From positions 1 to 64,000 of the forward strand of contig NIVC01002226.1 in NCBI GenBank assembly GCA_002269645.1: 64,000 bases of DNA, in the 5' to 3' direction. Below are positions 1,031 through 57,281 of the stretch, piece by piece; position 1 is the first letter of the stretch; each line of letters opens with the position of its first letter. This DNA comes from Macrostomum lignano (taxonomy: Eukaryota). The position numbers and the translations under genes are program-made. Below the pieces are notes generated by a model, which had not been told where the DNA came from, searched no databases, and saw only the letters and a list, made by a program, of their open reading frames with translations.

Positions 1031-2330
1031 ATGGTTAGCGGCCCGTCCTCTGTCGAGTCGGATAAAACACTCGAACAACATGCTCGCGATCGGACGCAGG
1101 AGGAGCTTGATAATGGACCGCTGGACACCAACTATGCTTTGCCCGAAGATATCGATGACGCCATGCTGGAGGAGCTGATGAGCACCGAGCCTGATTTAAA
1201 CAGGCTGGAGGCTGCGATTTCCGAGTTGGAACGCTCAGCAGAGAACGCCAGTAGCAGACAGCAAGCCGAATGTTATGTAAAAAAAGCTGAACACGTTCAT
1301 GGATGAACATCCCGAGGTTAGTTGCTTCGAAATCAGATATCCTGTGGTTTCAGTTAATCTTTGTATTCTACATGCTTTGAATTCAGATTTTCTATAGGTC
1401 TTTTCGTCAATTCTTGTATTGCTTTTGAACGTCGTAACTTTTTAGGCCCGTGTCGATCTGCAAACCAATTCCGCTGAGGCCATTGCATCTGCACTACGGT
1501 TGTTCTATGGAACCTTCAGGAAGCGTGACGGCAACCTTCCGGCATCGTCTACTCTGATTTGTATGCGAGCGGCATTGTACCGACATCTGATGAAGACCAG
1601 GCGAATGAATATCATTTCCGACAGAGAGTTCTCTAATGCCAATGCGACCTTGAAAGCACTGGCTCGTAGTTTCATCAGTGCAGGTGGCAGATCTAAACAT
1701 TTTGAAGACCTGGAGGAGGACGATTTGCGCAAACTGGCCGCTTACTTCAGCAGAGAATATCCGACGGCGTTGTTGCACGAAGTATATTACAACTGCATCT
1801 ATTACTTTGGAAATCCGGGACGCGAGTGGCGTCGCTGAATCAGTGAGAACAGCTTTATCTTTGAGAAGAGGCCCGACGGAGCGGAGGTTGTGCGGCTTAG
1901 GCTTGGCAAAGTTAAGAATGTAGGCAACAGCCTCAACCGAGAAGCGTGCGATGACTACAAGAACGCGGTGATGGTCTCAATCGCAGAAAAGTGCCCAGTC
2001 GAGGCACTAAAGATGTATCTACGTAAGCAAAGCGAGTCGATTTCTAGCAGCAGCTCTGGTGCTACTCCAGGCACGCCTTTCTTTTTGAAGCCAAAAGTTT
2101 CCAACTGGAAAACGTCTAATTGGTACTGTGCTAAACAGCCTGTCGGTGTCAACACCTTGGCGAGTCTCATGTCGACCATTTCACAAGCTGCTGGACTTAG
2201 TCGTCGGTTCACCGCCCACTGCGTGCGTCCAACAGTTGTGAAAGAACTCGCCGATGATAGCTTCTTAAATGCTGACATTTGCAAGATCACCGGCCAAAAA
2301 AGCACACGAACGGTAGAGCGCTATCTAATG
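1031..2330 (+). pseudogene. Decayed Crypton-type (DUF3504-like) tyrosine recombinase, N-terminal and catalytic part
   Basis: Spliced model 1031-1316 (donor GTTAGT 1317) + 1446-2330. It reads LRLFYGTFRKRDG..STLICMRAALYRHL, DREFSNAN, FGNPGRE, P.G.NTLASLM, FTAHCVR, KITGQKSTRTVERY, typical of Crypton/DUF3504 recombinases. Disablements: +1 frameshift in A7 (1279-1285), in-frame TGA at 1836, and the RRGRE-like Arg and TGHK-like His replaced. Confidence 0.8.
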
Positions 2331-3109
2331 TTTCTGCGAAATACTACGACATGGTTAACAAATGATAATACATTTAATGCACGCTTTTATCATATAAAAT
2401 CCAATTGCTTATTTTATTGACCTTTAATGGGCGCCCTGGCAGCAAGGAATCAATAGTCTATGGTACAACTACTTCTATACCGGGACCAATAAATCATTTA
2501 ATGGTAGATTGTATAGTATCGTAGCGCACGAGTGTCTATGGCCATTATTCAACGAAGTTGCATACTATACAAGTGCATTGTATCTATACTTTTAACTCAG
2601 CGCGCAGTCATTGTGTCATGCTGTACGCTCATTATTCCATGCTTAGGAGTCATTATTTTAGGCTTCTAAAAATACATTCATGAGACAATGTGTTTGTGTA
2701 TATGGTTTTGTCATAGACAATGATAAATTTTAGTCACTCAGTGGCTTCGCCACTCGTGAAAATTTTATCATTGTCTACCTCCAAAACCATATACACAATC
2801 TATCATTATTCCACACTTTTGCGGCCATTATTCCACACTTTTGTCGCGGTCATTATTCCATACTTTTTATCATGCTTCAATTGGCTGTTTTAAGAGTTGT
2901 TTTACCCATAGACGACTGAGTTGTGTGGCTTAGTTTGACCATAGACAACACTGTGAGTGCTGATTTTGCTTGCGTCTTGCAAGAAATCGAGTAGTGAGGA
3001 AGTATGAGGAAAGCGAGTAGTGGGAGAAAAAGCTATTTGTCTTGTCGAACAACTATGGCTATAGTGCATCTCGTCAAACAGCCGCGCTTATTAATTGAAA
3101 AAATCTTCC

Positions 3110-5139: not shown

Positions 5140-8100
5140 ATGAGCAGCGAACCCGCTGACCAGCATGAGCTGAGCTCACCTGTCAAGCAGTTCTGCAGCT
5201 ACACAAGTGCTCACGGACTGGGCAGATTCTCTGAGCAGTCCAGCTTCATCGGCAGGTCACTATGGCTCACTTTTCTGCTGGCTACCTACAGCGGGTTCGG
5301 CTACCACCTGTACACCCTGTTCGACAGGTACCAGCAGGCTCCGGTGTTAACAACAATAACGGTGTCCACTCTGCCGTACCAGTTCCCGGATGTGTACATC
5401 TGCCCGACTCACGCCGTCACCATGAGTAGAATTGTTCCGATGCTGTCGACATCGGATATTTACAATGTAGAGCTCGGCTCTAAGAGTAACACAAGCGAAA
5501 AAATCAAACTTTACGACTTTGATTTGTCTAAATCGGAAACTCTTTTTTTTAACAAGCCGACGCAAGCGTTTTTGATTGCATTGGAGCAAACTGAATCAGC
5601 CGTGATGAGCCAACTGAAACTGCTAGTAAAGTGTAAGCTGCCTTGAAAGTTCTAAATTTATGTTTGCTTCCTTCTACAACCTGCGAATTTGTGTAGTTAA
5701 GCTTCACCTCGGGTCCTTCGAGATTTACTTAGCTTTAGAGATCGACCTGACACCTCCACGACTAAGCTTAGATATCCACTTGGCACCTGCAAGACTGTAA
5801 GCATCTAAAGATCCCCATAACCCCGGTAGAAGCTACAGTACTGAGACTAAAAGTCGGTTTATACATTGAATAACTCGTACTTACAGCTGCTTTTCTACGA
5901 GACGAACTCAGCAGTGACTATAAATTCTTGAAATTAATTTTAAGCGATGTATTTCCAGCATTATAAATGCGTGAAAATAGATTTTCCCGCAAAAATGCGA
6001 GTCAAAACAATTTTTTGCAGCAAAAAATAAAAGCTCCGACTGTAGGAGAAGTCTCGACGGAAGTAACTACCTTGGAAACGCAAGCTATGCAGTTGTCTAT
6101 GGGCCATCTAGTATTACGATTGATCCTTCCGATTCAAAAACACTTGGAAACTATTCGGTTAAGCCACCTGTACAGCCCTACGTGATCTACAAGCAGTGCA
6201 TGCGATGGAATGATGCAGCACGCATGCTGCAGAGAGGGAGCTCGAATGCTGAAGTACTGGGTGGCTTGCTGATGAAACTCAACTTCTCAGAGACTGAGTC
6301 CAGGTGCCGCTTACCTCCGGGTTTGCCGCTGACAGAGTTTCTCCCAATTGCAACTCGTAAGTGACTGACTTAGCGAGTGAGTGAGTGAGTGACTGACTGA
6401 CTGACTGACTGACTGACTGACTGACTGACTGACTGACTGACTGACTGACTGACTGACTGACTGACTGACTGACTGACTGACTGACTGACTGACTGACTGA
6501 CTGACTGACTGACTGACTGACTGACTGACTGACTGACTGACTGACTGACTGACTGACTGACTGACTGACTGACTGACTGACTGACTGACTGACTGACTGA
6601 CTGACTGACTGACTGACTGACTGACTGACTGACTGACTGGCTGACTGACTGACTGACTGACTGACTGACTGACTGACTGACTGACTGACTGACTGACTGA
6701 CTGGCTGACTGACTGGCTGACTGACTGACTGACTGACTGACTGACTGACTGACTGACTGGCTGACTGACTGGCTGACTGACTGACTGACTGACTGACTGA
6801 CTGACTGACTGGCTGACTGACTGACTGACTGACTGACTGACTGACTGACTGACTGACTGACTGACTGACTGACTCTCTCACTCTTGAACTGACGCACTCC
6901 ATGCGCTCACACAGGACCCAGACGGGAAATAATTGGCTGCTTCCCAGTGACAGCGGACACGGCTTTCAACATCACGTGCTACAGCGGAGGCCTGGAGGCC
7001 TTTGAGCCGTGCGCCCAGTGCTGCGACAAGTTCAACGCTCCGTTTGCAGCGCTGCTGAACCGCGGCGACTGCCTCTGCGGCAGCTCCGAGGCCGCTGCCA
7101 CTCTGGCCGACGGGAGCTGGACCAGCTGCGACAGGCAGTGCGGCAACAGCAAAACGGAGCCATGCGGATCAGACAGGACCGCTGCTGTTATGATCATCCG
7201 GGATGTTGGTTTGTGTGCTGAATATACTCTAATTAATAAAGCTAATTAGTTTCTCCATCAGCTTTAATCCGTGACTTCTTTTAGAAGACAAACCAATGCA
7301 TATTGGAAGGTTTGGTCAATTGGAAGCTTATTCAGGCGGACCCTACTGCTTCTTCATGGACTCTGAAAGACTAAACGCTGGCTTGTGCGACGTCCCTTAC
7401 TGCGGTGAGTCAATGGTGTTGATTACAGCCAAAGCAGTCGAAGAAGCTAGTATTCATTCCGTTCACTGAGACATCAATTTAGGGCTGGTGAAAGAAACTT
7501 CGGTAGCTTAGGCGATTCTCTGCGGGTGGCCTGTTGCGAACTATCTAACAAACTAACGCAGCACATTACAGCCGCTACTAAAGAGTTCGACTGCGCCGTG
7601 AGCAAAAATGCCGGAGCGAATGTGGTGTACACTGGTCGGACGAACTGGACAGAGTCGGGCCGGGACTGTTTGCCTTGGAGTAGCGTGGAGAACGTGCAGA
7701 TGAAGATGAAACTCAATAAAGGTTTGTACGTTTCTGAACTTTCTAATCTCTGCTAGGGAAAACAATTTCTTCAATTTTTTGTACTCGGTTGGAAACTAGC
7801 AAACCAAAAATGGCACTAACGAACTAGGGAAAGAAACATTTTGAAGGCCGATTGTTCAAGTGATTTGCTGGTGCTATTTTTGGTATCCGTTTTAGTTTCA
7901 CACCTAGGGAGTGGATGGAGTAAGACTATCTAGCTACGATCTTATTAGCAAGAAAGCACACACCCACTATCTTAAAACAGCAACTTTTCATTCGTCTGAA
8001 TGGATGTTTTTAAATCAACATGCACGTGAAGTGAACCCAATGCGCCGAACTATAGTTGATAAATATTGCATTTCAGGTGTTCGCTTTGTTGAAAAACTGC

Positions 8101-10988
8101 TGCGACTAAAGATTCAAACCCCCGACCGTATTGGGAACACCAGCGACAACTTTTGTCGTCCAGTGAGCATAGTTATTGACCTAGCGGAAACTGAGAACGG
8201 CACCTTCACGTGAGTTTCACTAGCCTCATTTTTTGCAAGCAGCTGTAGAACGACTGCATCTCATTTTTAACATCACTTTCAGACGGCACCCAGTGTTAAT
8301 CTCCAATTCTCCCGTCTGCTTTGCCGATCCATCTCTGCTGCACACAATGTCGGTACCAATTTTTCAAACTCAGTTTTTTGAGATGGCATTCGAACGCTGC
8401 ACAATTCCTACTTGTTGTAAGTCGGAGCCTAAAAGTTGTTAAAACTATAAATTCTGAGCTTCACGCATTGCCTGTCGGCACAAAAATTTCAGCTGCTGAA
8501 ACCAGCGTCAGAGGCGTCTTCACTGACTCGGTCGGCAGCCACCTGCTCGCCAGGCAGTTCAGCAACGACCTCAGCATCGGCCTGGCCGACTGCACCTTCG
8601 CTGGCCAGAAATGCACCAAGGAGCACTTCGTCAATATCGACCATCCGCAGCTGGGAATGTGCCACCAGTTTCTCAAGCAGAGCTTCATCGCCAACATGTC
8701 GAGCACCCAGCTAGCAGGGAGTCAGCTGTCAATAACGTACTTCACCGACTCCACAGACTCTAAAGGGAAAACAGTCGAGGACATGCCCGAAATGACCAGT
8801 GCGTTTCATAACGGTATGAGCTTGGAGATCAGCGACCTGGCTTTCAAGGTAAGCGGTGTGTTTTTGATAGAGGAATCACAATCCGGATGTGAAAGTGCAC
8901 AATGAGATATCATTTGCGAATCAGTAAAGGCACACAAGGAAAGTTGATCGAGGTGTAGTCATTAAAAATTTTTGCACCGAATCATAAAAATGACTGAAGT
9001 CAAAGACAAAAACACACAAAACTGTACACTAAAAACTCAAAAGCGAGAGCTAAGCTAACCCTGAGGTAACAAAAAAGTTACATCCAGAAAGTCAATGCAG
9101 ACTTGACTGAACCTACCTTGGAAAGACTTAGAAAGCATGTTTCTTTTATTTTGTGCCAAAATGCGAAACATTTTAAAAAATTCAAATGAAATTGTCAAAT
9201 GTCTCAAATGATTGTAAAATAAGAAGTCTAGTGCAGAAACCCCACGTAAATCCAAAACTATTACCACAACCTTCCACTCCTAGGCGATCATTGTTCCGGA
9301 AGACTCGTTCCCCTGGTCGTCCAAGGGCATCGACGTGGCCGCCTCCCAACGCATGGACGTGCAGCTCAGGTTCGAAAGATACTCCAGACTCTCAACTGCA
9401 TCGAGGCCGTGCCTAGAGACCACCGAGCCAATTGTATATCGACTGCCGTCATGGAAGAAGTCCATGTCAAACGAAGACCTAAAGTAGGTAACTTTCTTCA
9501 GTGACATTAAATTTTCTTGAAAATTGCCTACGGCAAATTAAAGCAGAAGGTTTCAATGGCTCCTTTGAACTGAATTAAACATTCTTCAGAATGGAGGAAG
9601 CTGCAGAGTTGGTCGGCCACTCTGAGAATTGGTCTGAGATGATCAGAAGACTCCGGGCGATGCTGCTACTGCCGAACAGTTCAAGGTCAGTGCTTGAGAA
9701 ATAATTGCGTTGAGCTTTAGCTAGCATCGAAGGTACGAGCGTAGAACAGATAAAAGTGCATGATATTTCACTGGTCATAACTTAACGTTTATCCAGCGTT
9801 CTGACTGCCACTGAGCGACAGTTCAACGTCTCCGGTAGAGAGGATTGCATCAATTCGTACATTGTACAGCAGTTCATCGAAAACTGCAACTGTTTACCGT
9901 CGATTCTGCCAGTCAAGGTGGACTTATTCGACCAGTACAGCTACTGTTTCGACGCCAAGGACATCGGCAACTTGTCTATCGATCTTGAGATACGGTACAA
10001 TGAGCAGGTATCGCGGATAAACCAGTACGAGTTTGAGGCGATGAAGCGCTGTCAGTCTCCGTGTCGGACAGACGGCTACAGTGTCCGTTACGTCACTTAT
10101 CCGTGGCCTAACTTGAAGACTGCCAGATCCACTCTGCTATTGCAGAAGCTTGCAAGCAACTACGGCTACCGGACCAGCGTTAGCGGTCTTAGAGGTGTAG
10201 CCAATTTCTACCAAGCGTACTTGAAGTCACTTAGCCTCACCGGGGTGCCTTTTGCCAATCAGAGCGCCAAGGACATTCTGGGCTTCGAAAAAGAGCTCGA
10301 GTCGCTGCAGAACCGCCTGGCCAGACTGACAGTTCAGGCGTGGACCTCCGAAGGTCAGGAGATCACCGAAGAGGAGGCCTACCCTACCAAGAATCTCGTT
10401 GCAGACATAGGAGGAAATCGTTCATATTTTACGAGCATGCGTTTCGAATCAGATCACGGTGTGGTAAAAATTAAAAGCAATAAAATGCACCGAAACTTCG
10501 TCAAAAAGTTTCTGAAAATTTTCCCAAAGCTTTTGCAGCGTTGAGTTTCAGTCCAATGCGATCTCAAAGCGGAAGCAAGTCGGGAGAACTAAAACAAAAC
10601 TTGCACCTATAGAGTCCAGTACAGGCCAGTTCCTAGGGGTTGTAAAAGCTACTTCAGAGTGACCTATACACTATGATTTCACTTCGGTATCGATCGCAAA
10701 AATTTAATTCGAATTGTTTGCTACGTAGAGACGTAGACAATCGAATTCCCACTTAGAATCGTAAACGATTTTTTTCAATCTACAGGCGCCTTGGGTCTCT
10801 GGTCAGGCGTCTCGATTCTGACTGTCTGCGAGGTGGTCGAGCTGCTCATCTACATTAGCCAAAGGCTCGCAGCGAAATTGCGACAGAGGCCCAGCGCATC
10901 CGAGGGTTGCTCAGCAGCTGGTAGCAATGAACTCAAGGATTCCGAGGTACATGGCCCCAACGAGGCGGACATAATGACCGCTTTCTGA
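5140..10988 (+). CDS. DEG/ENaC (ASIC/FaNaC-like) sodium channel subunit with extracellular kringle-WSC-kringle insertion, ~1,043 aa
   Basis: Exons 5140-5632, 6021-6356, 6915-7208, 7285-7404, 7572-7721, 8077-8209, 8283-8416, 8493-8848, 9284-9483, 9590-9685, 9797-10413, 10786-10988 are phase-compatible (3,132 nt). Motifs: TSAHG pre-TM1, TM1, FPDVYIC, CTFAGQKC..HPQLGMCHQF, thumb C..CNC and CQSPC..Y..WP, TM2 ADIGGALGLWSGVSILTVCE (GxS filter). AATAAA at 11045. The last donor is non-canonical. Confidence 0.93.
6362..6874. repeat. (GACT)n microsatellite in channel intron 2
   Basis: Direct reading; it produces the SQSV antisense ORFs. Confidence 0.98.

Positions 10989-16256: not shown

Positions 16257-57281
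<41,025 letters not shown>

What the first reader, a model, noticed from the sequence alone, without database searches (positions are those of the whole stretch)
6021..7404. WSC domain nested inside kringle 1 by a symmetric phase-1 exon
Seen: kringle 1 cysteines 1-3 lie in exon 2 (6021-6356) and cysteines 4-6 in exon 4 (7285-7404). The complete WSC domain is exon 3 (6915-7208, 294 nt, a multiple of 3), bounded by phase-1 introns on both sides. Known: 1-1 symmetric exons are the classic exon-shuffling unit for extracellular modules; in Kremen the two domains are tandem, not nested. Inference: a domain-within-domain-within-channel built by sequential exon shuffling. Skipping exon 3 would keep the frame and restore an uninterrupted kringle, giving a possible splice switch.
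Basis: partly seen in the sequence, partly recalled or inferred. Interest (0 to 1): 0.72.

Follow-up and report, generated by a model that had tools for sequence, protein, structure and literature searches.

The report
WSC domain nested inside a kringle
A flatworm (Macrostomum lignano) sodium-channel gene has a kringle module in its extracellular part that is split by a complete WSC module carried on one frame-neutral exon. The arrangement is real and conserved across a species-specific gene family, but nothing shows the exon is used as a splice switch.

Summary
Exons 6021-6356, 6915-7208 and 7285-7404 have canonical AG/GT borders, are all phase 1-1, and carry 3, 10 and 3 cysteines. They belong to a 12-exon, 1045-aa DEG/ENaC channel gene of Macrostomum lignano.

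- **WSC:** exon 3 is a WSC domain by Pfam (28.9 bits, cut-off 27.8). Models containing it match yeast Wsc1 and Kremen1 in Foldseek.
- **Split kringle:** the two flanking pieces get no Pfam kringle hit. Joined, their paralogue profile matches a canonical kringle profile over all six cysteines (hhalign 97.5%, E 6e-12; shuffled controls E 0.006 or worse).
- **Conservation:** seven divergent M. lignano sequence groups keep kringle-WSC-kringle followed by a second kringle. The three compared at DNA level share intron positions and phases. No full-span match elsewhere among 1.84 billion representatives.
- **Hidden exon:** the flanking introns leave no room for one.

Not supported is the splice-switch idea. 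No database protein lacks exon 3, exons 2-5 are all equally skippable, and the weak exon 3 donor is not conserved. Whether the halves close into one disulfide-bonded kringle is inferred, not shown. This is an undescribed domain architecture, consistent with exon shuffling, of moderate interest.

The parts
5140..5632 (+). Exon 1: channel N-terminus, HG motif (SAHGLGRF), TM1 (5260-5322) and the first part of the extracellular domain. Ends in phase 1.
   Evidence: ATG to GT donor in my model. Pfam ASC. Aligns to FaNaC residues 65-160.
6021..6356 (+). Exon 2 (336 nt, phase 1-1): kringle 1 N-terminal two-thirds (K1a) with Cys1-3 (C172, C224, C260). Motifs are CRxxLxGxxYxGN, CxxW and SRCRxPPG. It carries about 30 extra residues between Cys1 and Cys2 and a predicted helical pair between Cys2 and Cys3.
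   Evidence: hhalign of K1a alone against a kringle profile gives 93.6%, E 2e-7, template columns 1-63. Best of 20 column shuffles is E 0.026. Helices in both models.
6362..6874 (.). (TGAC)n microsatellite, 128 copies, filling most of intron 2 (6357-6914).
   Evidence: Tandem Repeats Finder. Leaves no room for a hidden exon.
6915..7208 (+). Exon 3 (294 nt, phase 1-1): a complete WSC domain with 10 Cys. GC 0.63 and GC3 0.76, higher than exons 2 and 4.
   Evidence: Pfam WSC 28.9 bits against cut-off 27.8. Four of five paralogue exon 3 products score 33-47 bits. PDB profile hits to Wsc1 7pz2 and the Kremen1 WSC. Foldseek of the paralogue K1a-WSC-K1b models (WSC included): Wsc1 probability 1.00, TM 0.57-0.62. 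Composition.
7285..7404 (+). Exon 4 (120 nt, phase 1-1): linker plus kringle 1 C-terminal third (K1b), GGPYCFF...LCDVPYC, with Cys4-6 (C396, C409, C414).
   Evidence: Aligns to the C-terminal end of an HGF kringle, followed directly by the start of the next kringle (E 5.7e-6). hhalign of K1b alone gives 96%, E 4e-9, template columns 59-85.
7336..7404 (+). Shorter form of exon 4 from an in-frame internal acceptor (ttcag|GCGG, 51 nt downstream). It is used in the UniProt model A0A1I8HN37 (P0001) and removes 17 linker residues.
   Evidence: P0001 reads ...RDVGGPYCFF.... Whether this is a real isoform or a prediction artefact is unknown.
7572..8416 (+). Exons 5-7 (7572-7721, 8077-8209, 8283-8416): kringle 2 with six Cys (C422, C447, C491, C521, C548, C553) and long loop insertions. 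Internal introns are phase 1 and phase 2, and the block ends in phase 1.
   Evidence: Partial Pfam kringle hit of 17-21 bits, below the cut-off. hhalign 97.7%, E 2.5e-12. UniRef names K2-only fragments of two paralogues (P0160, P0168), not the window gene's own K2, 'Kringle domain-containing'.
8493..10988 (+). Exons 8-12: the rest of the DEG/ENaC extracellular domain, the GLWSGVS selectivity-filter region with TM2 (10797-10856), and the stop codon.
   Evidence: Pfam ASC 3e-40. FaNaC alignment. The donor of the last intron (AATC|gttcat) is weak and adds two residues (NR) compared with the paralogues.

Best explanation
**What it is.** The gene encodes a DEG/ENaC cation channel. Its closest solved relatives are the FMRFamide-gated channels. 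Its extracellular finger region carries a 389-residue, cysteine-rich cassette encoded by exons 2-7. The cassette consists of a divergent kringle interrupted between Cys3 and Cys4 by a whole WSC (PAN-like) domain, followed by a second divergent kringle.

**Shown.**
- The exon structure and phases.
- The WSC identity of exon 3.
- The homology of both flanking pieces to one kringle.
- Retention of the arrangement in seven divergent Macrostomum lignano sequence groups.
- Identical intron positions and phases in the three groups whose DNA was compared.

**Inferred.**
1. A class 1-1 WSC exon was inserted into the Cys3-Cys4 loop of kringle 1 before this gene family radiated.
2. The insert is constitutive, not a regulated cassette exon.
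3. The two kringle pieces, with 3 + 3 cysteines, close around the self-contained 10-cysteine WSC through the canonical 1-6, 2-4 and 3-5 bridges. Predicted pairs are C172-C414, C224-C396 and C260-C409.
4. The resulting kringle-WSC surface on the channel finger acts as a binding or tethering module for a glycan, matrix or protein partner, and so biases gating.
For: - **Gene model:** 12 GT-AG exons with an intact 1045-aa ORF and Pfam ASC 3e-40.
- **Position of the cassette:** the FaNaC alignment places it between FaNaC residues about 160 and 184.
- **WSC:**
- **Kringle homology of the halves:** hhalign of the joined halves against a 70-sequence kringle profile gives 97.5%, E 5.8e-12 over template columns 1-85. 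Each half matches its expected part. Reversed, column-shuffled and WSC controls give 0.1-6%.
- **Independent alignment:** MAFFT in three modes, and in the tool run, aligns canonical kringles to both halves and jumps the WSC. C1-C6, Y, G, W and R are at least 90% conserved.
- **K1b context:** it sits exactly where a kringle C-terminus precedes the next kringle in HGF.
- **Cysteine parity:** 3 / 10 / 3 per exon.
- **Conservation:** the arrangement is present in the window gene, P0003, P0002, P0009, P0007, P0010 and P0012. Exon positions and phases are identical in the window, L001 and L002.
- **Structure models:** with canonical kringles added to the alignment, the nested unit models as one compact body (pLDDT 83, pTM 0.80). 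The best Foldseek hits are the Kremen1 ectodomain and Wsc1.
- **WSC termini:** in Kremen1 the first and last WSC strands are neighbours in the sheet, so the domain's ends are close together, as an inserted domain needs (PMC5014086).
Against: - Pfam does not call kringle 1 at all. It calls kringle 2 only partially and below the cut-off.
- A PDB sequence-profile search with the joined halves gives only marginal hits to kringle C-termini.
- The unbiased AlphaFold run (8 sequences) was mediocre: pLDDT 65.8, with the first 50 residues below about 53.
- The better model used an alignment that already assumes the kringle register, so it is not an independent test.
- Neither model retrieved a stand-alone kringle structure by Foldseek.
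- Both models predict two helices between Cys2 and Cys3, unlike canonical kringles, which are low in secondary structure.
- No expression data, no donor gene and no functional data exist. Three M. lignano DEG/ENaCs tested in oocytes by others gave no peptide response, and I could not tell whether they belong to this family (PMC9234716).
Confidence: 0.62

Rival explanations
1. Splice switch: exon 3 is a regulated cassette exon. The channel then exists in two forms, one with a plain kringle 1 and one with a WSC-bearing kringle 1.
For: Skipping keeps the frame and yields ...PIATQDKPMH.... That joined sequence is the one that scores 97.5% as a kringle. In the window the exon 3 donor is weak (gtttgt) and its acceptor follows a 513-nt microsatellite.
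Against: - No protein in the collections read lacks exon 3. The models that differ lack exon 4 (P0003, P0008) or shorten it (P0001).
- Exons 2, 4 and 5 are just as frame-neutral.
- The weak donor is not conserved: it is gtaggt in L001 and gtaagt in L002.
- After skipping, the Cys3-Cys4 spacing would still be 39 residues (counted in the alignment), against 12 in Kremen1's kringle, C84 to C95 (PMC5014086).
- No RNA data could be consulted, so this is absence of evidence only.
Confidence: 0.1
2. The two flanking pieces are kringle-derived in sequence but no longer fold as one kringle. K1a, with its 30-residue insertion and helical pair, would have become a different small domain, and K1b a remnant hairpin.
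For: - No Pfam or PDB sequence hit for K1a.
- Confident helices predicted at model residues 55-64 and 68-76.
- Foldseek finds no kringle-only structure.
- Two predicted gene models drop exon 4 altogether (P0003, P0008).
Against: - All six cysteines and the kringle motifs are invariant across paralogues down to about 35% identity.
- The 3 + 3 cysteines need cross-pairing.
- hhalign covers the whole kringle, Cys1 to Cys6.
- pTM 0.80 for the nested unit (biased alignment).
- The exon 4-less models come from an older automatic annotation that also mis-splices other exons (P0008).
Confidence: 0.15
3. The nesting did not arise by insertion. An ancestral Kremen-like tandem (kringle-WSC-kringle-kringle) lost the C-terminal third of the first kringle and the N-terminal two-thirds of the next, leaving two complementary remnants around the WSC.
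For: - Kringle next to WSC is an established pairing in Kremen, where the two pack tightly (PMC5014086).
- Kremen1 is the top Foldseek hit for both models.
- All exons involved are phase 1-1, so exon deletions would stay in frame.
Against: - It needs two precise, complementary deletions. Kringle 1 has no intron between Cys2 and Cys3 and none before Cys4 other than those bounding the WSC exon, so the breakpoints would have to coincide with the WSC exon borders anyway.
- No intermediate form was found among the paralogues.
Confidence: 0.08
4. Artefact: exon 3 belongs to another gene, or the arrangement comes from mis-assembly or mis-prediction.
For: The window gene has no complete database model. 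The available models for it (P0001, P0008) are partial and inconsistent.
Against: - One continuous open frame runs across 12 canonical exons.
- The same order and phases occur on two other contigs with independent NCBI models.
- Further full-length proteins show the same order (P0010, P0159, P0170).
Confidence: 0.02

Closest known systems
Kremen1/2 ectodomain (kringle-WSC-CUB)
   Same: It is the only well-studied protein that combines a kringle with a WSC domain. In Kremen1 the two pack tightly and together form the Dickkopf-binding face (PMC5014086). It is the best Foldseek match of both models, and its WSC matches the exon 3 profile.
   Different: Kremen's domains are in tandem, with the kringle complete before the WSC. 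It has a CUB domain and a single-pass anchor. Here the WSC lies inside the kringle, there is no CUB, a second kringle follows, and the host is an ion channel. The alignments have high rmsd (15-18 A), so the relative orientation of the domains is not shown to be the same.
DEG/ENaC channels, nearest solved: FMRFamide-gated Na+ channels (FaNaC, 7yvb / 8on7)
   Same: Two transmembrane segments, an HG motif, the GxS region, conserved extracellular cysteines, and Pfam ASC 3e-40.
   Different: FaNaC has about 24 residues where this gene has the 389-residue cassette. My literature searches found no paper describing a DEG/ENaC channel with a kringle or WSC domain (also 38). From my own knowledge, other family members have lineage-specific finger elaborations (the ENaC protease-sensitive inhibitory tracts, the extra cysteine-rich region of nematode degenerins), but these are not recognisable mobile modules.
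Kringle arrays of plasminogen, HGF and apolipoprotein(a), as class 1-1 exon-shuffling modules
   Same: Six-cysteine register, the CRNP-like and PWC-like motifs, phase-1 borders, and K1b followed directly by the next kringle as in HGF (PMC8001218).
   Different: Both kringles here fall below Pfam's cut-off. They have long loop insertions, and kringle 1 hosts another domain. I found no report of a kringle as the host of an inserted domain.
Inserted ('nested') domains in general
   Same: One domain interrupts another at a surface loop. A 2026 survey puts insertions in about 20% of multidomain proteins (PMC13114784 abstract).
   Different: Most catalogued cases are intracellular enzymes. Here both host and guest are small disulfide-rich extracellular modules, and the guest is exactly one symmetric exon, so the genomic footprint of the event is still visible.
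Yeast Wsc1 sensor domain and WSC domains of fungal glyoxal oxidase
   Same: Foldseek probability 1.00 and TM 0.57-0.62 normalised to Wsc1. Pfam WSC.
   Different: This WSC has 10 cysteines rather than Kremen1's 8. It has no Ser/Thr-rich stalk or transmembrane anchor of its own, and its function here is unknown.

Membership tests
Kringle domain (Pfam PF00051) | Score at or above Pfam's gathering cut-off (34.3 bits). | tested here: not met
   Kringle 1 halves joined: no hit. Two of six paralogues reach E 0.046. Kringle 2 reaches 14-22 bits, N-terminal part only.
Kringle domain (Pfam PF00051) | Homology to canonical kringles over the whole domain, with six cysteines and the G-x-x-Y-x-G, C-x-x-W, C-R-x-P and P-[WY]-C motifs in register. 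| tested here: met
   hhalign of K1a+K1b gives 97.5%, E 5.8e-12, template columns 1-85; K2 gives 97.7%; controls 6% or less. MAFFT register across the split.
Kringle domain (Pfam PF00051) | Disulfide bridges 1-6, 2-4 and 3-5, and the kringle fold (little regular secondary structure). | tested here: inconclusive
   Model coordinates were not returned, so no S-S distances could be measured. Models predict two helices between Cys2 and Cys3. Foldseek gives no stand-alone kringle hit. The 3/10/3 cysteine parity argues for cross-pairing.
WSC domain (Pfam PF01822) | Score at or above Pfam's gathering cut-off (27.8 bits). | tested here: met
   Window exon 3 alone scores 28.9 bits. It scores 23.5-26.2 bits when scanned inside longer sequences. 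Paralogues score 33.1, 33.7, 46.0 and 47.4 bits, and one degenerate copy (P0007) has no hit.
WSC domain (Pfam PF01822) | PAN-like beta-sheet-plus-helix fold as in Wsc1 and the Kremen1 WSC. | tested here: met
   Foldseek against 7pz2 gives probability 1.00 and TM (target) 0.57-0.62. Kremen1 and glyoxal oxidase WSC are also hit. The model has one helix (134-143) flanked by strands.
DEG/ENaC (Pfam PF00858, ASC) | Pfam ASC above cut-off, two transmembrane segments, an HG motif before TM1 and a G-x-S motif in TM2. | tested here: met
   139 bits against a cut-off of 23.6. SAHGLGRF and GLWSGVS are read in the model. FaNaC and ASIC5 are the best solved relatives.
Kremen family | Tandem kringle-WSC-CUB ectodomain on a single-pass membrane protein. 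| tested here: not met
   No CUB hit in Pfam. The WSC lies inside the kringle, and the host is a two-TM channel. It resembles Kremen only in domain content.
Class 1-1 exon-shuffling module | Domain borders coincide with introns of phase 1 on both sides. | tested here: met
   Exon 3 is phase 1-1 and coextensive with the WSC hit. The same holds in L001 and L002. The whole cassette (exons 2-7, 1167 nt) is also flanked by phase-1 introns.
Class 1-1 exon-shuffling module | An identifiable donor, or a relative of the host lacking the insert with an intron at the insertion point. | tested here: not met
   No protein with an uninterrupted kringle 1 and no close WSC donor was found among 1.84 billion representatives. 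A channel-only search returned only cassette-bearing family members or fragments.
Alternatively spliced cassette exon | Transcripts or proteins both with and without the exon. | tested here: not met
   All database proteins spanning the site include exon 3. RNA reads could not be examined with these tools, so this is not a definitive test.

The most novel reading that the evidence does not exclude
The kringle-around-WSC unit is a rebuilt Kremen-like composite binding face grafted onto the gating finger of a DEG/ENaC channel. That would make this Macrostomum family ion channels gated or tethered by an extracellular protein or glycan partner, such as a cysteine-rich Dickkopf/colipase-fold ligand or a matrix component. 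This would be a new way of coupling a mobile binding module to DEG/ENaC gating. A variant of this reading is that inclusion of exon 3 is regulated to switch that coupling.
Probability: 0.12. Interest if true: 0.8.

Novelty: new variant of a known kind. Interest (0 to 1): 0.45.

Why it matters
- **Exon shuffling.** It is an unusually clean genomic example of a module inserted inside another module. One symmetric phase 1-1 exon equals one WSC domain and sits in a loop of a kringle, and the host's two halves remain recognisable.
- **Channel biology.** It shows that the DEG/ENaC finger, the region that sets gating and ligand sensitivity, can carry a 389-residue cassette of mobile extracellular modules. 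This cassette has been kept through a sizeable lineage-specific expansion.
- **If it binds a partner.** These channels would then be a tractable model for tethered or protein-ligand gating, in an animal with transgenesis and RNAi.
- **If it does not.** The finding is still a useful caution: standard domain annotation labels these proteins only 'WSC domain-containing' and misses both kringles.

Tried and rejected
1. **Pfam and PDB sequence searches for kringle 1.** Pfam on the joined halves gave no hit. PDB sequence-profile searches with 3 and 6 paralogues gave nothing or only marginal K1b hits. This forced the move to profile-profile comparison.
2. **Search with my spliced window protein.** The large representative search turned it away, so I used paralogue substrings instead.
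3. **Structure prediction with the WSC removed.** This would have directly tested 'skipping restores a kringle'.
4. **Foldseek on both models.** I hoped for kringle hits; only Kremen1 and WSC-type structures came back. A discontinuous, heavily decorated kringle may simply be beyond a sequential local aligner, so I treat this as inconclusive.
5. **Channel-only homologue search.** The aim was to find cassette-less relatives and look for an intron at the insertion site. Only the same family returned, so the outer insertion event could not be dated.
6. **Exon 3 splice-site weakness as a hint of regulation.** The weak donor is not conserved in the paralogues.
7. **Higher GC/GC3 of exon 3 as a sign of foreign origin.** Exon 8 and others are similar in the window, and the contrast is absent in L002.
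8. **Literature.** I found no paper linking DEG/ENaC channels with kringle or WSC domains, and none on a kringle hosting an inserted domain.
Full report
**What the window is.** The region is eukaryotic DNA with short GT-AG introns. A homologue search with my spliced translation returned only Macrostomum lignano proteins. The best was UniRef A0A1I8HN37 (P0001), 97% identical and named 'WSC domain-containing protein'. The window is therefore genomic DNA of this free-living flatworm.

**The gene.** The result is a 12-exon model, 5140-10988 on the + strand, with canonical AG/GT at every junction and an uninterrupted 1045-codon frame.
- Pfam gives ASC (amiloride-sensitive sodium channel) at 3e-40.
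- The closest solved structures are FMRFamide-gated sodium channels and ASIC5.
- TM1 lies in exon 1 and TM2 in exon 12, so everything between is extracellular.
- In the FaNaC alignment, query residues 12-106 match FaNaC 65-160 and residues 558-602 match FaNaC 184-225. The 389 residues of exons 2-7 thus sit where FaNaC has about 24 residues. I identify this position, from my own knowledge of the family, as the finger region.

**Checking the observation.**
- Exon 2 encodes three cysteines, exon 3 ten, and exon 4 three.
- The exon 3 product alone passes Pfam's WSC cut-off (28.9 against 27.8 bits) and covers the profile almost end to end. The exon and the domain are coextensive.
Intron 2 is 558 nt, of which 513 are a (TGAC)n microsatellite. 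Intron 3 is 76 nt. In a paralogue the two introns are 82 and 179 nt.

**Is 'kringle 1' a kringle?** This was the weakest part of the observation.
- Pfam does not see it, either in context or with the WSC removed.
- PDB sequence-profile searches with the joined halves gave nothing with three paralogues and only marginal hits to kringle C-termini with six.
- A profile of the whole cassette did align its K1b-linker-K2 stretch to 'end of one HGF kringle, linker, start of the next' at E 5.7e-6. That fixes K1b as a kringle C-terminus.
- For K1a I built a canonical kringle profile from 70 kringles found in the large search. I compared profiles with hhalign:

| Query profile | Probability | E-value | Kringle template columns |
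|---|---|---|---|
| K1a + K1b joined | 97.5% | 5.8e-12 | 1-85 (Cys1 to Cys6) |
| K1a alone | 93.6% | 2e-7 | 1-63 |
| K1b alone | 96% | 4e-9 | 59-85 |
| K2 | 97.7% | 2.5e-12 | 6-85 |

- Controls stay at 6% probability or less, and the best shuffled E-value is 0.006. They were reversed profiles, 20 column shuffles each, and the WSC profile.
- MAFFT, in three modes and in the tool's own run, aligns canonical kringles to both halves and opens one long gap over the WSC.
- I conclude that exon 2 and exon 4 are the two parts of one kringle-derived sequence, split between Cys3 and Cys4.
- It is a decorated kringle. It has about 30 extra residues between Cys1 and Cys2, and a Cys2-Cys3 segment predicted to be helical.

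**Structure.** Two predictions were possible, both on paralogue P0002, because spliced window sequences are not accepted.
- With eight family sequences the K1a-WSC-K1b unit gave pLDDT 65.8 and pTM 0.59. The WSC and the Cys2-Cys3 part were reasonably confident and the first 50 residues poor.
- Adding 40 canonical kringles to the alignment raised this to pLDDT 83.2 and pTM 0.80. That alignment presupposes the kringle register, so it shows feasibility rather than proof.
- Foldseek on both models returns the Kremen1 ectodomain (E about 8e-4, up to 235 aligned columns but rmsd 15-18 A), yeast Wsc1 (probability 1.00) and a fungal WSC. It returns no stand-alone kringle.
- Coordinates are not returned, so the three cross-bridges could not be measured.
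- Two indirect arguments support closure: the odd-even-odd cysteine count (3/10/3), and the adjacency of the first and last strands in the Kremen1 WSC sheet (PMC5014086).

**Relatives.** A profile of the cassette was scored against 1.84 billion representative proteins.
- Every protein matching the cassette end to end, or a large part of it, is from M. lignano.
- Everything else matches only the WSC columns or only the K1b/K2 columns. These are ordinary WSC-repeat or kringle-repeat proteins, for example from Diplonema and an ostracod.
- Within M. lignano at least seven divergent sequence groups keep K1a-WSC-K1b-K2. Their cassette regions are down to about 33-38% identical (whole-protein identities are). 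They are the window gene, P0003, P0002, P0009, P0007, P0010 and P0012, with all kringle cysteines conserved.
- For two of them I fetched the contigs and mapped the annotated proteins exactly. Exon order, positions and phases are the same as in the window: exons 2-5 are phase 1-1, then 1-2, 2-1 and 1-0.
- The nesting therefore predates the expansion of the family.
- Other macrostomids are probably not in the searched collections, so 'species-specific' may really mean 'clade-specific'.

**The interpretation.**
- *Exon shuffling.* The footprint is what that model predicts: a module on one symmetric phase-1 exon, and a whole cassette (1167 nt) between phase-1 introns (PMC8001218). I found no donor and no cassette-less or WSC-less relative. 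The order of events is not established. A route via a Kremen-like tandem with two deletions cannot be excluded, though it is less parsimonious.
- *Splice switch.* Skipping exon 3 does keep the frame, but so would skipping exon 2, 4 or 5. No database protein lacks exon 3. The deviant models lack exon 4 (P0003, P0008) or start it at an internal in-frame acceptor at 7336 (P0001), and these come from an older automatic annotation with other obvious errors. The weak window donor of exon 3 is strong in both paralogues. The WSC exon is kept in every full-span group read, and four of five paralogue copies tested still pass Pfam's cut-off. I rate the switch at about 10%, pending RNA data.

**Likely function (inference).** The cassette is extracellular, disulfide-rich and carries eight N-glycosylation sequons. 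It sits on the part of DEG/ENaC channels that, from general knowledge of the family, tunes gating and ligand sensitivity.
- Kringles and WSC/PAN modules are binding modules. In Kremen1 the kringle-WSC pair forms one ligand-binding face (PMC5014086).
- The most economical reading is a constitutive binding or tethering unit that couples an external partner to gating.
- No functional data exist. A study that expressed three M. lignano DEG/ENaCs from a FaNaC-adjacent clade saw no response to the peptides tested (PMC9234716). I could not establish whether those genes belong to this family.

**Novelty and verdict.** The proteins exist in databases under automatic names, but I found no description of a DEG/ENaC with kringle or WSC domains, or of a kringle hosting another domain. 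Domain insertion as such is common (PMC13114784). I file this as a new variant of known kinds: real, conserved, a tidy illustration of module-in-module shuffling, and of moderate interest to channel biologists.

Noticed in passing
window 6362-6874: A (TGAC)n microsatellite of about 128 copies fills almost all of intron 2, directly upstream of the WSC exon. The paralogue introns at this position are 82 nt (L001) and 582 nt (L002).
   Followed up: partly
window 7334-7336: An in-frame internal acceptor (ttcag|GCGG) lies 51 nt into exon 4. It is used by the UniProt model A0A1I8HN37 and deletes 17 linker residues between the WSC and the GGPYC motif. It could be a real alternative 3' splice site or a prediction artefact.
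   Followed up: partly
window 10413-10425: The donor of the last intron is weak (AATC|gttcat). It adds two residues (NR) inside the conserved DIGG-ALGLW motif compared with the paralogues and FaNaC. No canonical donor exists at the paralogue position.
   Followed up: partly
window 7572-8416: Kringle 2 is split over three exons, with introns of phase 1 (between Cys2 and Cys3) and phase 2 (between Cys3 and Cys4). Kringle 1 shares neither position. The two kringles therefore differ in intron layout although they are neighbours.
   Followed up: partly
window 6915-7208: Exon 3 has higher GC (0.63) and GC3 (0.76) than exons 2 and 4 (0.47-0.49 and about 0.50). The contrast is weaker in L001 and absent in L002, so I did not read it as a sign of foreign origin.
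   Followed up: partly
window 1839-2417: An open frame upstream of the channel gene has a sub-threshold DUF3504 match (27.9 bits, cut-off 29.7).
   Followed up: no
window 19457-26465 and beyond: A large + strand gene downstream has UBR4 N-terminal and UBR-box zinc-finger matches (E3 ubiquitin ligase UBR4-like), with long low-complexity Q/S/A tracts.
   Followed up: no
window 30482-63739: The second half of the window is packed with tandem arrays. They include tetranucleotide runs of 0.3-1.9 kb (TCTG, TGTC, CAGA, CTGT), an (AGT)n run of 1.2 kb, and satellites of 21-67 nt periods up to 1.8 kb. These explain the extreme base skews in the composition profile.
   Followed up: no
P0007 / L002 4962-5237: One paralogue lineage keeps the exon 3 position and phase, but its product no longer scores as WSC in Pfam and has 11 cysteines. 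It is a degenerate or repurposed insert.
   Followed up: partly
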